A stretch of DNA of 64,000 bases from Entomortierella parvispora E1425 (taxonomy: Eukaryota; Fungi; Mortierellomycota): contig BQFW01000007.1 of the NCBI GenBank assembly GCA_020891255.1, positions 992,001-1,056,000 of the forward strand, written 5' to 3'. Made by a program: the position numbers and the translations under genes. Under the pieces are notes generated by a model. It ran no database searches and had not been told where the DNA came from. It saw only the letters and a list, made by a program, of their open reading frames with translations. Positions 57,998 to 63,328 of this stretch are shown piece after piece. Positions within the stretch are counted from its first letter, which is position 1, and each line of letters starts with the position of its first letter.

Positions 57998-58678
57998 TCG
58001 GTCCTTTTTTTTTTTTTTTTTTTTTTTGAGTGAGGTCCATGATGCCCGGCTTCGCGAGGATGTACGGATATACGCACGACGTCAATGGCAATGAAGGCAA
58101 ATAGCCGAAGCAAACGCCGATCATGTCACATATTGGGTGATAGCAACTGTGGTCCACATCTTTATCTAGGCAACCCAAGCAACAATTGTTGCAATACCAA
58201 CGTGCCTCGCGACTCGGAATGCTCCTGTTTCTCAGGTGCTTTCCTTGGACGCAGAGATGGCGAATACGTGAAGGTTTCTAAAGAACAAGAAGCACCTTTC
58301 CCTTGTGCCCATTCTTTATTCGCACTGCGGTTCTACCACTATGACGTGCACAGGAGGAGACCAATGAAGTTGAAAACTCTCCCTCACAAAATCCAAACCA
58401 ATCATTTACCTCTCGTGGAGATCAATTGGAGGCAAAACAGGCCTGGTCCATCGTCAACGACAAACAATGCAGGTCCTCAGATTCTCAGAATGGCAAAGAT
58501 TTTTTTTTTCAATTGCAAATTTTATTCAAATAATAATCTCTCTATGACATTTCCATTGATGTTGACAACAAGTGGATCAAATCTAAACACCAAAAGATGC
58601 AAAAGAACCGTTAGGAAAAAATGAATCATTTGTTTGTTGATGGCGAAAAGATATCCCTCTCGGAGCTGTTCGAGTTGC

Positions 58679-58766
58679 AATGTCAGAAGTAATTTATAAG
58701 GTAGCTGTGTTTTTGTCGTCAGAGTGCAGAATGCACTACAGCCAAATGCCAGAATCATCATTTAAG
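58679..58766 (-). ncRNA. snR13: Box C/D snoRNA, snR13-like, copy in intron 2
   Basis: C box AUGAUGA 58761-58755; guide GGCAUUUGGCU; C'-like UGACGA; second antisense tract AGCUACCUUA; D box CUGA 58686-58683; 11-bp external stem 58778-58768 / 58679-58669. Confidence 0.85.
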
Positions 58767-58990
58767 ATGCAACTCGAAAGGGGCTCCAAGAGTCATCGAG
58801 AACCAAGAGACTACATACCATAGAGAGACTATACAAAAGCGACTTGCGGGTATCGATTGGGAGAGAAAAGGAGCTATCGTTACACTGCAAGTCAAAAATA
58901 AAAAACGCAGAGTTAATATTTAGCCTTGAAGTTGCGTTGAGGGTCAAAAAGTTGGAGGGTACTCTCTTCATTTTTGAGATTCAAATGATA

Positions 58991-59078
58991 ATTGTCAGAA
59001 GTAATTTATAAGGTAGCTGTGTTTTTGTCGTCAGAGTGCAGAATGCACTACAGCCAAATGCCAGAATCATCATTAAAG
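58991..59078 (-). ncRNA. snR13: Box C/D snoRNA, snR13-like, copy in intron 1
   Basis: 82 bp identical to the other copy (58993-59074 vs 58681-58762). External stem of different sequence at 59093-59083 / 58986-58976. Confidence 0.85.
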
Positions 59079-59160
59079 AATGATTTGAATCTCCAAAGGG
59101 AGGGAAGGAGGGTTGCTCAAAAATGATGCAGGAGAAGAATTACATACCATTTTTTCCGTC

Positions 59161-59220
59161 GGTTCTCGAGAGAATCGATCACAACTAGCCAGAACTGAGT
59201 TGTGATCGTCCTCGAGAACC
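59161..59220. repeat. 60-nt near-perfect inverted repeat (hairpin)
   Basis: ggttctcgag/ctcgagaacc (10 bp) plus cgatcacaact/agttgtgatcg (11 bp), with an 11-nt loop. Confidence 0.9.
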
Positions 59221-59509
59221 AGGCGTACTAGACGCGTTGGATAGGGAGGAGGAAGGATGGAGAGGGGGAGAAGGGAAGTGGTAAGGGTAAGGAAAGAAGA
59301 GAAAAGCATGGGTAAAAATTTTCGTGCCTTTATAAGAGTGTGGAGGACTTTGAATCATCACAAACAGAGCCAAGCCACAGCCTCGGGGTTTGGTGGCGTT
59401 TTTGTGGACCTGTTTGAGGAACGCGTGTTGAAACAAACAACCAGACTCAACCCAAGTGTTCGTCTACACTTTCAGTCTACCACCAACCCAAGCATCCATC
59501 ACTCCAGGA

Positions 59510-61801
59510 ATGAACGGGACCATCACAGACCCCTCTGACTGGCCCTCAGACTTTGTTTCTCTCAGGGAGATTGACTCTCATCTGAGATGTCCCATCTGCA
59601 AGGAACTAATGCGCGGCGCCATTATGTTGCAATGTGGACACAACTTTTGTTCAGAGTGCATTCGCCGACATTTGGACAAAGAACAGGCTTGCCCGGCGTG
59701 CAGAATGGCCGCATCAACCTCTCAAATGCGGAGAAACGTTGCCTTGGATGAAATTGCAAACCACTTTGGCGATTGCAGGTACGACACTCTTTTCATGGTC
59801 AAGGGAAATTGGTGGCGAAAGGTGTCGAAAAGAGTTCAAATCTGATTCGACCATGACTGACCCTTATTCTTCAATAGAGCTCGTTTGCTAAAGGTAGTGA
59901 CAAGCACAGACGAAAGGCCTGCATCCGATACAAGCATGGAAATTGCCGGCGGCGTTCGTCAGCAGAAGAGGCGAAGGGTTTCTGGACGAATCACACCAAA
60001 GTCGTCTCAAGAACCAATGGACCTGGACTCAAGCAGTAACCAAAGATCTAGCTCTAAAAAAAGCAACGACGATGACGATGACGATTTTTCTGTTTCTTCG
60101 CAGGACTCGGGAAATAGCCGTCGCGAAGGTACAGAAAAGTTTCGTGACTGCACATCATGAACCCTCTCTCTCTCTTGTATTAACAAGCTGTCTCCATTCC
60201 GCCATGTATTAGAACCAGCGCTTCGACGATCAGGGAGAACATCAACATTATCAACACCAGTTACAGATTCCGTGCTACAATCGACTCCTATCAGTGGACG
60301 AGCGTTCCCATCATCGTCATCGTCATCGGAGCCGACAGTAGCTGCTACACCGTTGACGCCTACCACACCTACAAAAGCAGTGGCCAAGCACACTCTTGTT
60401 GCTTGTCCTGTCTGTGAATGCGCCATTCCGGAAGCTCAAACAAACAGCCACTTGGATAAATTTTGCTTTGCAGGCAAAAAAGATCCGATTTACACTCTTC
60501 CATACAATCTGCTCATGGGCCATCTGACGGAGGCCAAGGCTATCGAATTGTACGAGCGTGTTGGGTACCCGGCGGCAGGAACGAATGTCACGGCATCATC
60601 TACCAAAAGTTCATCGACTCAACCAACTGCTCGCACCCAGAGCATCGTCAACCCTTTTGGACAATCATCACCTCGATCTCAGTACCAAACCGGAAATGCG
60701 TCACTGTTCGGAAGTCCTTCCAAGCAGCCTGTTCCGGTTATGGCCAAACCGATCCCCCCAGAACCCAAAAGGTAAGTTGGTTTCTTCCTCTTGATTGATA
60801 TTGAATGTCCAATTGTCGTGGTAATTCTGACACTCCTCCTCATTGCTTTTCACGGCATGTAGGATCCCAAAACTAACGTATAGCGTCCTCAATGATAAGC
60901 AATTGCGGAAGAAACTAAGTGTATGTGACACCACATGCGGCCCTGTTTGATATGTTCATGAAATGGAAAGAAAACAAATGCTAACTCTTCTTGGCTTCTA
61001 TGGTATTAGGAGTTGGGACTCGCGGTGCATGGCGACAAACAACTGATGCAGAAACGACATGCTGAATACGTGACAATTTACAACGCCAATTGCGATTCAA
61101 CCCGGCCCTTATCAGAAGCTCAACTGCGCCGAAACATGGAGATTTGGGAAAGAACCTACGATCAGGACATTGCTGCCAAGGAACAGTTGAAGCGCAACGC
61201 AGAGCAACAGAGGCTGATCCAACAGAGAGAACTGGTCCAAAAACAAGCAGCAGTTCCTCAGAGCTCAGTCTCTTCTACAGCAAATCCATCGGATTCTTCT
61301 TCATCTGCCTCGACCTCAAGCAGACCCTTTTCAAGGTCAAGCTCAGGATCCAACTTTGTCCCCAACCATAACAACAACGCAGAGGTCAATGTGGCTGTGG
61401 CTGAAGCATCGGCTTTTGCGCACGCGCTCAAGTACGCTGCGGAATATAAGGAACTTATTGCGGATATCCGGAGTCGAAATGAGAAGGACAAAGTGCCTAA
61501 AAAGGAGACCAAGCAGGACAACAAAAAGGCAACACCGACTGGGTCAACTAAATCGAGTCAATCAAGTCAGTCTGGCAATCAACCGAGAGCATCAACCCCT
61601 GCCAACACAAGCAGCAGTACCTCTGGCACGCAACCCCTACCACCACAGGTCCCTGAGCAAACAGCTAGTCAATCCAGCATTACATCCAGTCAATCATCAA
61701 GCATCGTCGAGGACCAGCCAAGTAGCCAGTCCAGCCAATATAGCATGCCCCTGACCCCTTCTAAGTTACGCCATCCACGCCGGCCCATAGAACATACATA
61801 G
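59510..61801 (+). CDS. RAD18: Postreplication repair E3 ligase Rad18, multi-exon
   Basis: RING (CPIC...CGHNFCSECIRRHL...CPAC), UBZ (CPVC...NSHLDKFC) and SAP-like LRKKLS|ELGL...HAEYVTIYNANCD. Confidence 0.93.
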
Positions 61802-62042: not shown

Positions 62043-63328
62043 TTAAACGCTAAAAAAAGCAAAGGAAAGAGAAACAGATAGATAAGTACATTGGTTCATA
62101 TTGATTTGTTTCCTGAAACTGCAGCCCATGAGTAACTGGATGGCCAGTGTTACTTACCGGGAGGGGTACATCATCTGTTGTGAGGAGAATCCATGAATAT
62201 TCCAGAGAAAATAGAGAAGGGACTGTTAGCATCCATTACTTGCACTGATCTCAACGTAGGAACTAGAAAAGGGGGCTGAAAACAATAACGTACGACGCGG
62301 ACGGAGGCACCGAAGGACTTGGCGGGCAAGTTGTTGCGGAAACGGGCCTTGACGGCACCGGAACCACCGTGGGAGCGGGTGATGCGTCCCCAGATGCAGC
62401 GGATCTTGGATCCGTTGACCTCACGCTTGGCGCGGTAGACGAAAGCGACACGCTTGCCGAGGTAGAACTCGGTGTCAGCAGCGGTCTTGACGCCCTCGAT
62501 CTGGACGAGCGAGATATCGGGGCGCTGGTTGCGCTTAGCGCGCTTGAATCCAAGAACACGACCTTTAGCGTAAAGACTGGTTGATAGAAATCCCATCGAA
62601 ATAGAAGGAAAAAAGAGAGAAAAGGGGTGCAGACGGTTAGAGTCCATTTTCTCAAACGTCTTTTTGTTTTCTCTTCTTCCAGAGTCCTGAGCAGTCAAAG
62701 CCATGTTGGCGGTAAACACAGCAAATAAACACAGCAAATAGTGCAAGTGCACTTTTGTTGTGGTTGAACAGTTGAATCCAGTGTCTGAAGAAACATCGTC
62801 GATTGATGTTAACGGTCGACTGCACTGAGCTCAATCAACACTCATGCTGAGAGGACAAGAGTAAATCCAGTCTCGCCCTCAGCAATGCATTCTGTTGAAG
62901 AGAGTTTGTGCTGTGTAAGCGAACAGACTTCGTAGATTTGATGTTCAGTTGTTCTCCAGTTTGATGAATGATGTTGTCCTGGGTCTGCCAGCCCTCGCTG
63001 TTGAGATAGAAAATATCCTCCTATATGACTGCCGCTGGATTAACAGAGAAGGAGGGCCATTCCTCTTCTCCAACAGGAGCCTCTGTTCATGGCCACCTCA
63101 TGCATCAGGTCCCTTCTGGGTCATGCCATCAAAGTCATCGTGAGGATGCATGATTTTTTTTGTGAAAGTCGGATTTCCAGATCCTGTCGCCTCAAGATGA
63201 AGTTGGTCCTGTGTGATGAGTAGGTGCAATATCGCCGATGGTCCGATGGATGGATCGATGGGTGTGTCCTTGACCCATGGATGCTGCATTGATTTCGTCA
63301 AGCCAATCACAGTCATGTACCGAGTCAT
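62043..63328 (-). CDS. RPL33: 60S ribosomal protein L33/L35a (eL33), 4 exons
   Basis: MTR|[17 protein letters not shown]...[13 protein letters not shown]...WGRITRSHG...[13 protein letters not shown]|MMYPSR|V-stop. First intron 63320-62577 (744 nt); the first exon is less certain. Confidence 0.95.

What the first reader, a model, noticed from the sequence alone, without database searches (positions are those of the whole stretch)
58500..59300. Non-coding host gene delivering two identical snR13-type snoRNAs, each clamped by a different 11-bp stem
Seen: an exact 82-bp duplication (312-bp period) whose edges coincide with box C and box D on the minus strand. Each copy sits in its own GTATGT...AG intron of a TATA- and AATAAA-bounded transcript lacking a real ORF. 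The flanks are unrelated in sequence, yet each forms a perfect 11-bp closing stem (ttcgagttgca/tgcaactcgaa and gagattcaaat/atttgaatctc), so structure is conserved where sequence is not. The RNA carries two antisense tracts, GGCAUUUGGCU and AGCUACCUUA, complementary to adjoining parts of the conserved LSU rRNA segment UAAGGUAGCCAAAUGCC. The +5 rule from a CUGU D' box points to the A equivalent to yeast A2281. This guide-plus-extra-pairing layout matches yeast snR13 as I recall it. Zero divergence between the cores with fully diverged flanks implies strong selection or gene conversion, and possibly dosage control. The unit is transcribed divergently from RAD18.
Basis: partly seen in the sequence, partly recalled or inferred. 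Interest (0 to 1): 0.75.

Follow-up and report, generated by a model that had tools for sequence, protein, structure and literature searches.

The report
Twin snR13-type snoRNAs, non-coding host
A soil fungus of the Mortierella group has a small gene that makes no protein and carries, one per intron, two identical guide RNAs that should direct a methyl mark on a conserved adenosine of large-subunit ribosomal RNA; it is real and well conserved, but an ordinary member of a well-known class.

Summary
There is an 87-nt direct repeat with one mismatch (82 nt exact) and a 312-bp period. On the minus strand it reads as a box C/D snoRNA: C AUGAUGA, D' CUGU, a 6-bp hairpin, C' UGACGA and D CUGA. These are the only two copies in the 38.9-Mb genome.

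The D' guide GGCAUUUGG(CU) is the best match anywhere in the genome's own rRNA. It places LSU A2409, the equivalent of yeast 25S A2281, at +5. A second tract, GCUACCUUA, pairs with the abutting 9 nt; the literature describes this layout for snR13 and U15.

Two metagenome contigs from relatives carry the same locus, one with two copies and one with at least three beside RAD18. Boxes, guide and tract are invariant while spacers, exons and introns drift. Exons carry non-3n indels and no shared ORF. The external stems covary. Two core sites are shared within species rather than between orthologous copies, which points to gene conversion.

Corrections: the two flanking stems are not unrelated. They are diverged homologues with compensatory changes. 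Rfam gives no snR13 or SNORD15 match, so membership rests on the target, not on sequence.

The scan already reported other non-coding snoRNA host genes elsewhere in this genome. This is a new member of a known kind. No expression or methylation data were available.

The parts
58521..59334 (-). Putative non-coding snoRNA host gene, from the TATA box to the AATAAA signal: three short exons and two introns
   Evidence: Signals read directly. The same architecture is present in L014 and, with three introns, in L012. Window versus L014: exons are 67-76% identical with non-3n indels, snoRNA cores 94-97%.
59329..59334 (-). TATAAA box, followed by a pyrimidine-rich tract of about 65 nt (about 59245-59310)
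   Evidence: L012 has TTTAAAA plus a CT-rich tract at the same relative place. The transcription start itself is inferred.
59161..59222 (-). Long hairpin of about 25 bp in exon 1, ending 13 nt before the first 5' splice site
   Evidence: inverted repeats I5 and I7.: -38.1 kcal/mol, z -5.5. A hairpin sits at the same position in L012 (z -2.3) and L014 (z -3.9). Function unknown.
58885..59147 (-). Intron 1 (GTATGT ... TTAAC ... AG, 263 nt), carrying snoRNA copy 1
   Evidence: Splice signals are conserved in L014.
58993..59074 (-). snoRNA copy 1 (82-nt core): C box 59067-59072, guide GGCAUUUGG 59054-59062, D' CUGU, hairpin, C' UGACGA, accessory tract GCUACCUUA 59009-59017, D box 58995-58998
59080..59097 (-). 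5' arm of the external stem of copy 1 (3' arm at 58972-58989)
   Evidence: I1; 1 of 500 shuffles as stable; covariation; U-A in the window is C-G in L014_1.
58819..58884 (-). Exon 2 (66 nt)
   Evidence: The L014 orthologue is 62 nt and has a stop in the same phase.
58583..58818 (-). Intron 2 (GTATGT ... CTAAC ... AG, 236 nt), carrying snoRNA copy 2
   Evidence: Conserved in L014.
58681..58762 (-). snoRNA copy 2 (82-nt core, identical to copy 1): C box 58755-58760, guide 58742-58750, accessory tract 58697-58705, D box 58683-58686
58768..58778 (-). 5' arm of the external stem of copy 2 (3' arm at 58669-58679; a second outer helix lies beyond it)
   Evidence: I3, 11 bp perfect; z -5.35; 0 of 500 shuffles as stable..
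58521..58582 (-). Exon 3, up to the AATAAA signal (58521-58526)
   Evidence: AAATAAAA is conserved in L014.
59507..59779 (+). First exon (RING finger) of RAD18, transcribed divergently; its ATG lies about 175 bp from the host gene's TATA box
   Evidence: ORF; 70% identity to Podila verticillata rad18; RING Pfam families; same neighbour in L012.

Best explanation
This is a short RNA polymerase II gene with no protein product. Its only conserved content is two identical copies of one box C/D snoRNA, one in each intron.

Inferred pathway: after splicing and debranching, exonucleases trim each intron back to the snoRNP. An external stem in the intron brings box C and box D together so that the core proteins can assemble.

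Inferred function of the mature RNA (about 80-87 nt): its D' guide (GGCAUUUGG, extendable by the CU of the D' box) pairs with LSU rRNA 2405-2413. This puts A2409, the equivalent of yeast 25S A2281 at the H70/H71 junction, at the fifth position from D' for 2'-O-methylation by fibrillarin. The neighbouring A2408 (yeast A2280) is a possible second site. A second conserved tract (GCUACCUUA) lies 10 nt upstream of box D, so it cannot itself guide methylation. It pairs with the abutting rRNA nucleotides 2397-2405 and acts as accessory pairing that reinforces the short guide.

The two copies arose from an old duplication of the whole exon-end/intron unit. Their cores are kept identical by gene conversion on top of purifying selection.

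Shown here: sequence anatomy, target complementarity, conservation, covariation, lack of a coding signal, synteny. Inferred: transcription, splicing, processing and the methylation itself.
For: - Anatomy and duplication.
- Target: the guide's 11 Watson-Crick pairs to LSU 2403-2413 are the best match in the genome's own 18S, 5.8S and LSU rRNA. The four loci carrying the target motif are genuine LSU rDNA.
- Numbering: the bases named in PMC4174444 (C2278, A2280, A2281, G2283, G2288) fit the motif in only one register. That gives an offset of +128, so A2409 corresponds to A2281.
- Accessory tract: a perfect 9-mer falling within 20 nt of the primary target has P about 0.003 by shuffling.
- Literature: snR13 and U15 are listed among snoRNAs with conserved extra base-pairing. 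snR13 has one of the shortest guides, and its guide and extra targets overlap (PMC3116282). Such tracts lie in the second guide region, not next to box D.
- Conservation: seven copies from three species keep GAUGAU, GGCAUUUGGCUGUA, UGACGA, AGCUACC and UCUGA invariant. The hairpin sequence and the spacer before box D vary. L012 copies 2 and 3 were not selected by the search pattern, yet they keep the boxes, the guide and 7-8 nt of the tract.
- Internal hairpin: present in all seven copies with different sequences.
- External stem: 12 pairs, 4 with changes on both sides, 94% of cells paired, against 18-53% in the slid controls.
- Host is non-coding: snoRNA cores are 94-97% identical between window and L014, exons 67-76% and introns 60-75%. 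Exon 2 differs by 4 nt and has a premature stop in L014. The exons have no blastn match in L012. The exon-1 ORF has no Pfam hit.
- Gene conversion: the flanks are orthologous one-to-one, but core columns 54 and 60 are C/C in both window copies and T/A in both L014 copies. Paralogues differ at 0 and 2 sites, orthologues at 3.
- Synteny: RAD18 and RPL33/L35a are neighbours in L012 as well.
- Context: other one-snoRNA-per-intron non-coding hosts were reported in this genome and in N. crassa.
Against: - No RNA, splicing or methylation data could be consulted.
- Rfam gives no hit at gathering thresholds and no snR13 or SNORD15 hit even at E up to 10.
- The D' box (CUGU) and C' box (UGACGA) each depart from consensus by one base. 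A one-base shift in where D' is drawn would move the predicted site to A2408.
- One L012 copy has CGAUGA for box C.
- The external stems of L012 copies 1 and 3 are not better than shuffles.
- The gene-conversion argument rests on two sites in one species pair.
- The comparative set is only three species. Two of them were found with a pattern that required the guide and the tract in at least one copy.
Confidence: 0.85

Rival explanations
1. The snoRNAs are real, but they are released from an unspliced polycistronic precursor by endonuclease cleavage, as in budding-yeast and plant clusters. The apparent introns are not used, or splicing is only a minor route.
For: A conserved long hairpin in exon 1 and strong double-stranded external stems could be RNase III substrates. 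No splicing data exist.
Against: Every unit in three species has a consensus 5' splice site (GTATGT or GTAAAT), a CTAAC or TTAAC branch point 25-30 nt before an AG, and one snoRNA per interval. Splice signals are conserved where the surrounding intron is only 60-75% identical. The loops are not AGNN.
Confidence: 0.08
2. The host gene codes for a small protein. One candidate starts at the ATG at 59309 and runs through exon 1 (54 codons) and exon 2 (22 codons). Another is a peptide of about 24 codons starting at the ATG that ends exon 1. The snoRNAs would then be passengers of a coding gene.
For: Exon 1 from 59309 and exon 2 are open in one phase.
Against: In L014 the same phase hits a stop after 9 codons of exon 2, and the exon is 4 nt shorter. 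Exons are no better conserved than introns and have no match in L012. There is no Pfam hit. The ATG at 59309 lies only about 20 nt from the TATA box and is probably upstream of the start site (inference).
Confidence: 0.04
3. It is a functional C/D snoRNA, but it is not a descendant of the snR13/U15 lineage. A different snoRNA would have acquired the same guide by target switching, and the resemblance in layout is convergent.
For: There is no Rfam match to snR13 or SNORD15. The RNA is 82 nt, against 125 nt for the N. crassa snR13 homologue CD1. Target switches and recombination of guide elements are reported in fungi (PMC5824354 and PMC2780460).
Against: It shares the target, the use of the D' guide, an unusually short guide and overlapping accessory pairing with snR13. 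No other candidate for this site was found in the genome with the model. C/D families are routinely defined by target because their sequences diverge quickly.
Confidence: 0.15
4. The identity of the two cores reflects purifying selection alone on an old duplicate, or a very recent re-duplication, with no gene conversion.
For: Most of the core is functional sequence. The window copies differ at no site, so conversion cannot be seen within one genome.
Against: Non-functional spacer positions (columns 54 and 60) changed between species in both paralogues in parallel, while the flanks stay orthologous one-to-one. The flanks of the paralogues are far more diverged than the cores. The identity boundary falls 5 nt before box C and at the end of box D.
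Confidence: 0.15

Closest known systems
Saccharomyces cerevisiae snR13 (guides 25S Am2280 and Am2281)
   Same: It targets the same adenosines at the H70/H71 junction through the D' guide. It has a very short guide plus a conserved accessory tract whose rRNA target abuts or overlaps the guide's target (PMC4174444, PMC3116282).
   Different: From my own knowledge, yeast snR13 is a single, independently transcribed gene of about 124 nt. Here the RNA is about 82 nt, intronic and duplicated. No sequence-level match could be shown.
Neurospora crassa CD1 (snR13 homologue, 26S Am2242)
   Same: It is an intron-encoded fungal C/D snoRNA with a D' guide of about 10 nt to the same rRNA segment.
   Different: CD1 is 125 nt and a singleton. 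Its predicted site is the A2280 equivalent, one base 5' of the one predicted here. N. crassa has few snoRNA isoforms, which the authors attribute to RIP.
Vertebrate U15 / SNORD15A and SNORD15B
   Same: From my own knowledge, it targets the equivalent 28S adenosine, and two or more copies sit in different introns of one host gene. Conserved extra base-pairing is reported for it.
   Different: From my own knowledge, the vertebrate host is the coding ribosomal protein S3 gene. Here the host is non-coding. There is no Rfam SNORD15 match.
Non-coding snoRNA host genes (mammalian UHG and GAS5; N. crassa clusters I-V; other hosts in this same genome)
   Same: One snoRNA per intron, short poorly conserved exons without a real ORF, and a pyrimidine-rich 5' end.
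   Different: Known hosts mostly carry different snoRNAs. This one carries only repeated copies of a single snoRNA: 2 here, 2 in L014 and at least 3 in L012.
External (precursor) stems of intronic C/D snoRNAs
   Same: From my own knowledge of work on intron-encoded C/D snoRNAs that lack a terminal stem, complementary intron sequences flanking boxes C and D can substitute for a weak terminal stem.
   Different: Nothing mechanistic differs. Here the stem is documented by covariation between paralogues and orthologues.

Membership tests
Box C/D snoRNA | Box C (RUGAUGA) near the 5' end and box D (CUGA) near the 3' end | tested here: met
   AUGAUGA and CUGA are 78 nt apart in both copies. GAUGA and CUGA are invariant in 7 copies from 3 species; one copy has CGAUGA.
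Box C/D snoRNA | A terminal or external stem that juxtaposes boxes C and D | tested here: met
   External stems of 11-18 bp, with 0-1 of 500 shuffles as stable. 12 aligned pairs, 4 with changes on both sides, 94% paired. The stems are weak in L012 copies 1 and 3.
Box C/D snoRNA | Internal D' and C' boxes | tested here: met
   CUGU and UGACGA, each one base from consensus, are invariant in all 7 copies and separated by a 4-6 bp hairpin of varying sequence.
Box C/D snoRNA | An antisense element of at least 9 nt ending at D or D' and complementary to rRNA or snRNA | tested here: met
   GGCAUUUGG(CU) against LSU 2403-2413, the best match in all of the genome's own rRNA.
Box C/D snoRNA | A stable RNA of about 70-130 nt bound by fibrillarin, Nop56, Nop58 and Snu13 | not testable with these tools
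   No expression or CLIP data were available.
Box C/D snoRNA | A match to a curated Rfam C/D model at its gathering score | tested here: not met
   The best match is snosnR61 at 28.1 bits against a gathering score of 45. This is a generic C/D resemblance only.
snR13 / U15 (SNORD15) target family | The D' guide places the equivalent of yeast 25S A2280/A2281 at the methylation position | tested here: met
   +5 from CUGU is A2409, which corresponds to A2281 at an offset of +128. A2408 corresponds to A2280 if D' is drawn one base later.
snR13 / U15 (SNORD15) target family | Conserved accessory pairing to the rRNA next to the target, overlapping the guide's target | tested here: met
   GCUACCUUA against 2397-2405, which shares C2405 with the guide (or 3 nt if the CU of D' pairs). 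P about 0.003. 7-10 nt of the tract are kept in all 7 copies. The property is stated for snR13 and U15 in PMC3116282.
snR13 / U15 (SNORD15) target family | Sequence homology to snR13 or SNORD15 outside the boxes and guide | tested here: inconclusive
   No such Rfam family appears even at E up to 10 on a 109-nt query. No yeast or human sequence was available by reference for a direct alignment.
snR13 / U15 (SNORD15) target family | The target adenosine is 2'-O-methylated, and this depends on the snoRNA | not testable with these tools
   Needs RiboMeth-seq and a deletion of both copies.
Non-coding snoRNA host gene (UHG/GAS5-like) | Each snoRNA lies within an intron that has canonical splice signals | tested here: met
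   GTATGT ... TTAAC or CTAAC ... AG in both window units. The same holds in L014 and in three units of L012.
Non-coding snoRNA host gene (UHG/GAS5-like) | The exons lack a conserved ORF and evolve faster than the snoRNAs | tested here: met
   Exons are 67-76% identical against 94-97% for the snoRNAs. There is a 4-nt length difference and an in-phase stop in L014, and no exon match in L012.
Non-coding snoRNA host gene (UHG/GAS5-like) | A spliced, polyadenylated transcript exists | not testable with these tools
   No RNA-seq was available. TATAAA and AATAAA are present.

The most novel reading that the evidence does not exclude
The structurally conserved hairpin of about 25 bp in exon 1 ends 13-15 nt upstream of the first 5' splice site in all three species, with a different sequence in each. 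It could be a processing or regulatory element of the host transcript. One possibility is an RNase III or Dicer entry site that sets the balance between splicing-dependent snoRNA release and decay of the precursor. Together with the gene-conversion-maintained multi-copy array, it would tune the dosage of a snoRNA whose guide is unusually short.
Probability: 0.15. Interest if true: 0.5.

Novelty: new member of a known kind. Interest (0 to 1): 0.3.

Why it matters
It adds a well-supported snR13/U15-type guide to the largely uncharted snoRNA set of Mortierellomycota; a search for papers naming both Mortierella and snoRNA returned seven, and none of the titles or abstract openings shown concerned Mortierella snoRNAs. 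This supports the view that methylation of the H70/H71 adenosines, and the short-guide-plus-accessory-pairing solution, predate the split from Dikarya. The locus is also a compact example of three things: exons free to drift while intronic snoRNAs are fixed, an external precursor stem kept by compensatory change in paralogues and orthologues, and concerted evolution confined almost exactly to the box C to box D interval. None of this changes current understanding. It is useful mainly for annotation and as a small case study.

Tried and rejected
- Rfam at gathering thresholds on the whole window found nothing. Rfam by E-value on 1 kb and on 109 nt gave only sub-threshold generic C/D hits and hairpin look-alikes such as mir-7616 on the exon-1 hairpin. 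I treat this as uninformative rather than as a refutation.
Five of them (L008-L011, L013) have no C/D boxes and are chance or coding matches.
- A sequence-only covariance model of the seven copies found no further copy in the genome. Its weak third hit (L017, E 0.08) shares the 12-mer UGGCAUUUGGCU but has no box D within about 100 nt, so I rejected it as chance.
- A canonical D-box guide was rejected. The 10 nt before box D are not conserved among copies and have no convincing rRNA target.
- D' = CUGA at core nt 41-44 was rejected. Its 'guide' would be the self-paired hairpin, and UGACGA would lose its role as C'.
- The 179-aa plus-strand ORF at 58085-58624, which overlaps the 3' end, has no Pfam hit and lies in a stretch not conserved in L014. 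I take it to be spurious.
- No supplementary alignments of snR13 were held for PMC3116282.
The exons were read one by one by reference.
Full report
**Observation.** The region was read on the minus strand and scanned for repeats. There is an 87-nt direct repeat, 58681-58767 and 58993-59079, with one mismatch and a spacing of 312 bp. The mismatch lies 5 nt upstream of box C, so 82 nt are identical.

Each copy has this layout, numbered along the 82-nt core:

| Element | Sequence | Core nt |
|---|---|---|
| Box C | AAUGAUGA (UGAUGA) | 3-8 |
| Guide | UUCU-GGCAUUUGG | 13-21 |
| D' box | CUGU | 22-25 |
| Hairpin | AGUGCA-UUC-UGCACU | 26-40 |
| C' box | UGACGA | 42-47 |
| Spacer, then accessory tract | GCUACCUUA | 58-66 |
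| 10-nt spacer, then box D | CUGA | 77-80 |

58669-58679/58768-58778 is 11 bp and perfect. 58972-58989/59080-59097 is 18 nt at 89%. Both are far more stable than shuffled flanks: 0 of 500 and 1 of 500 shuffles did as well.

- ATG|GTATGT at 59148/59147 and 58819/58818.
- AG| at 58885/58884 and 58583/58582.
- TTAAC and CTAAC branch-like motifs 25-30 nt before each AG.
- TATAAA at 59329-59334 and AATAAA at 58521-58526.

BLAST and a covariance model of the family find only these two copies in the 38.9-Mb assembly.

**Organism and neighbours.** The plus-strand ORF starting at 59507 is a RING finger. Its nearest named relatives are rad18 of Podila verticillata (70% identity) and Actinomortierella ambigua (61%). 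RAD18 is transcribed divergently, and its ATG lies about 175 bp from the host gene's TATA box.

**Target.** The motif UAAGGUAGCCAAAUGCC occurs four times in the genome, each time inside a bona fide eukaryotic LSU rRNA gene. In the reconstructed 3517-nt LSU it lies at 2397-2413.
- Scanning the snoRNA against the genome's own 18S, 5.8S and LSU rRNA, the best hit of the first guide region is AGCCAAAUGCC at 2403-2413. That is 11 Watson-Crick pairs, of which the last two use the C and U of D'.
- PMC4174444 names m5C2278, Am2280, Am2281, G2283 and Gm2288 in yeast. Those five base identities fit the motif in only one register. The offset is therefore +128, and the third A of CCAAAUGCC, A2409, corresponds to yeast A2281.
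- Counting back from CUGU, the fifth guide nucleotide (U17) pairs with A2409.
- Eukaryotic D' boxes are degenerate. Drawing the box one base later would put A2408 (yeast A2280) at +5. In yeast both sites are methylated by snR13.

**The second tract.** GCUACCUUA pairs perfectly with 2397-2405, immediately 5' of the guide's target.
- A perfect 9-mer within 20 nt of the primary target is expected in about 0.3% of shuffles of that 29-nt region.
- The tract ends 10 nt before box D. The 10 nt next to box D are not conserved between copies, so it cannot guide methylation itself.
- This is the arrangement described by van Nues et al. (PMC3116282). Conserved extra base-pairing sits in the unused second guide region and not adjacent to box D. 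It is listed for snR13 and for human U15. snR13 has one of the shortest guides, and its guide and extra-pairing targets overlap.

Inferred geometry: the two rRNA-bound helices abut, and the D' box, hairpin and C' box module loops out between them.

**Comparative evidence.** I therefore used the one metagenome scan, with a pattern requiring GGCATTTGGCTG, 16-46 nt, then GCTACCTTA. Five of the seven loci are chance hits without boxes. Two are true homologues.
- **L014** is about 81% identical to the window over the locus. It has the same gene: two copies 310 bp apart, the same splice signals and the same AATAAA.
- **L012** is much more distant; its RAD18 exon 1 is 68% identical at the protein level. 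It has RAD18 and the RPL33/L35a gene in the same order and orientation. It carries three copies, each in its own interval bounded by GTATGT, GTATGT or GTAAAT, with CTAAC ... AG closing the first two. The contig ends 160 nt after the third copy.
- L012 copies 2 and 3 did not match the search pattern, so their conservation is independent of it.

In the alignment of all seven copies, the invariant blocks are exactly the functional ones: GAUGAU, GGCAUUUGGCUGUA, UGACGA, AGCUACC and UCUGA. The D'-C' hairpin keeps its place but changes sequence (GUGCA/UGCAC, GCGC/GCGC, UGUG/CACA, GUGC/GCAC). The spacer before box D is free to vary.

**The host is non-coding.** Window versus L014:

| Segment | Identity |
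|---|---|
| snoRNA cores | 94% and 97% |
| Exons | 67-76% |
| Rest of the introns | 60-75% |

- Exon 2 is 66 nt in the window and 62 nt in L014.
- In the phase set by the conserved ATG that ends exon 1, the window's exon 2 is open. L014 has a stop after nine codons.
- The only longer reading frame needs the ATG at 59309, about 20 nt from the TATA box. It has no Pfam match.
- The exons have no detectable similarity in L012.
The exons were examined one at a time by reference.

Non-coding hosts with one snoRNA per intron are documented in N. crassa (PMC2780460). Other agents of this scan reported them elsewhere in this genome.

The flanks are not unrelated. With a little more context, MAFFT aligns the 5' arms (UUUGGAGAUUCA against UUUCGAGUUGCA) and the 3' arms (UUGAAUCUCAAA against UUGCAACUCGAA) of the two window copies and their L014 orthologues. 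On that alignment the 12-pair helix behaves as follows:
- 94% of cells are paired, against 18-53% when the 3' partner is slid by 1-3 columns.
- Four pairs change on both sides.
- One pair occurs as U-A, C-G and G-C in different copies.

The two 'different' stems are therefore one ancestral stem that diverged by compensatory substitution. It also shows that the duplicated unit was the whole exon-end plus intron. Both upstream exons still end in ATG|GTATGTA (repeat D7).

**Concerted evolution.** The flanks, and the single mismatch 5 nt before box C, identify win_1 with L014_1 and win_2 with L014_2. The duplication therefore predates the split of the two species. Yet two spacer positions in the core (columns 54 and 60) are C and C in both window copies and T and A in both L014 copies. 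Paralogues differ at 0 sites (window) and 2 sites (L014), and orthologues at 3. Gene conversion limited to roughly the box C to box D interval is the simplest account. It rests on only two sites. The three L012 copies differ at 10-21 sites of the 79-column core, so homogenisation is not universal.

**What is not shown.** Transcription, splicing, accumulation of the RNA and methylation are all inferred. Rfam offers no support for family membership. There is nothing at gathering scores. By E-value there is only a generic resemblance to snosnR61 (28 bits against 45 required) and no snR13 or SNORD15 line at all. I regard the test as weak for short, fast-evolving C/D RNAs, and it is outweighed by the comparative evidence. 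'snR13-type' should be read as the same target and layout. Descent from the same ancestral gene is likely but unproven.

**Comparison with the known, and verdict.** Each element has a precedent:
- snR13 or U15 guiding this adenosine.
- Accessory pairing next to the guide's target.
- Intronic snoRNAs in non-coding fungal hosts.
- External precursor stems.
- From my own knowledge, several U15 copies in different introns of one vertebrate host gene.

This is a new, well-documented member of a known kind in a fungal phylum whose snoRNAs are little described. The one unexplained feature is a hairpin of about 25 bp in exon 1 (59161-59222), just upstream of the first 5' splice site. It is kept in structure but not in sequence in all three species. 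I note it without an established function.

Noticed in passing
window 59161-59222 (minus-strand RNA); L012 10080-10132; L014 3990-4046: A long, nearly perfect hairpin of about 25 bp sits in exon 1 of the host gene and ends 13-15 nt before the first 5' splice site. It is present at the same place in all three species with different sequence. Between the window and L014 there is one compensatory C-G to U-A change plus wobble changes. z-scores are -5.5, -2.3 and -3.9. The loops are not AGNN. Rfam's only comment is a chance-level mir-7616 resemblance.
   Followed up: partly
L007 2019-2137 and 3425-3543 (G000 contig C5, upstream of the 18S gene): Two 5S rRNA genes lie on the opposite strand in the spacer just upstream of an rDNA unit, so 5S is linked to the 35S/45S repeat in this fungus.
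   Followed up: no
window 59141-59150 and 58812-58821: Both upstream exons end in the same ATG|GTATGTA decamer. This is a remnant showing that the duplication unit included the exon end and the 5' splice site, not just the snoRNA.
   Followed up: partly
L017 (G000:C15:1254861-1254909, minus strand): A weak covariance-model hit (E 0.08) contains GUGAUG followed by the same 12-mer, UGGCAUUUGGCU, as the guide. It has no box D within about 100 nt. It is probably chance, though a decayed relic cannot be excluded.
   Followed up: partly
window 62171-62752 (minus strand); L012 6917-7207: An exon of a ribosomal protein L35a/L33 gene lies beyond RAD18. It is 91% identical at the DNA level in the distant relative L012. 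The block of host gene, RAD18 and RPL33 is syntenic across Mortierellaceae-like genomes.
   Followed up: partly
window 58085-58624 (plus strand): A 179-aa ATG ORF overlaps the 3' end of the host gene. It has no Pfam hit and lies mostly in a stretch with no similarity to L014. It is probably not a gene.
   Followed up: partly
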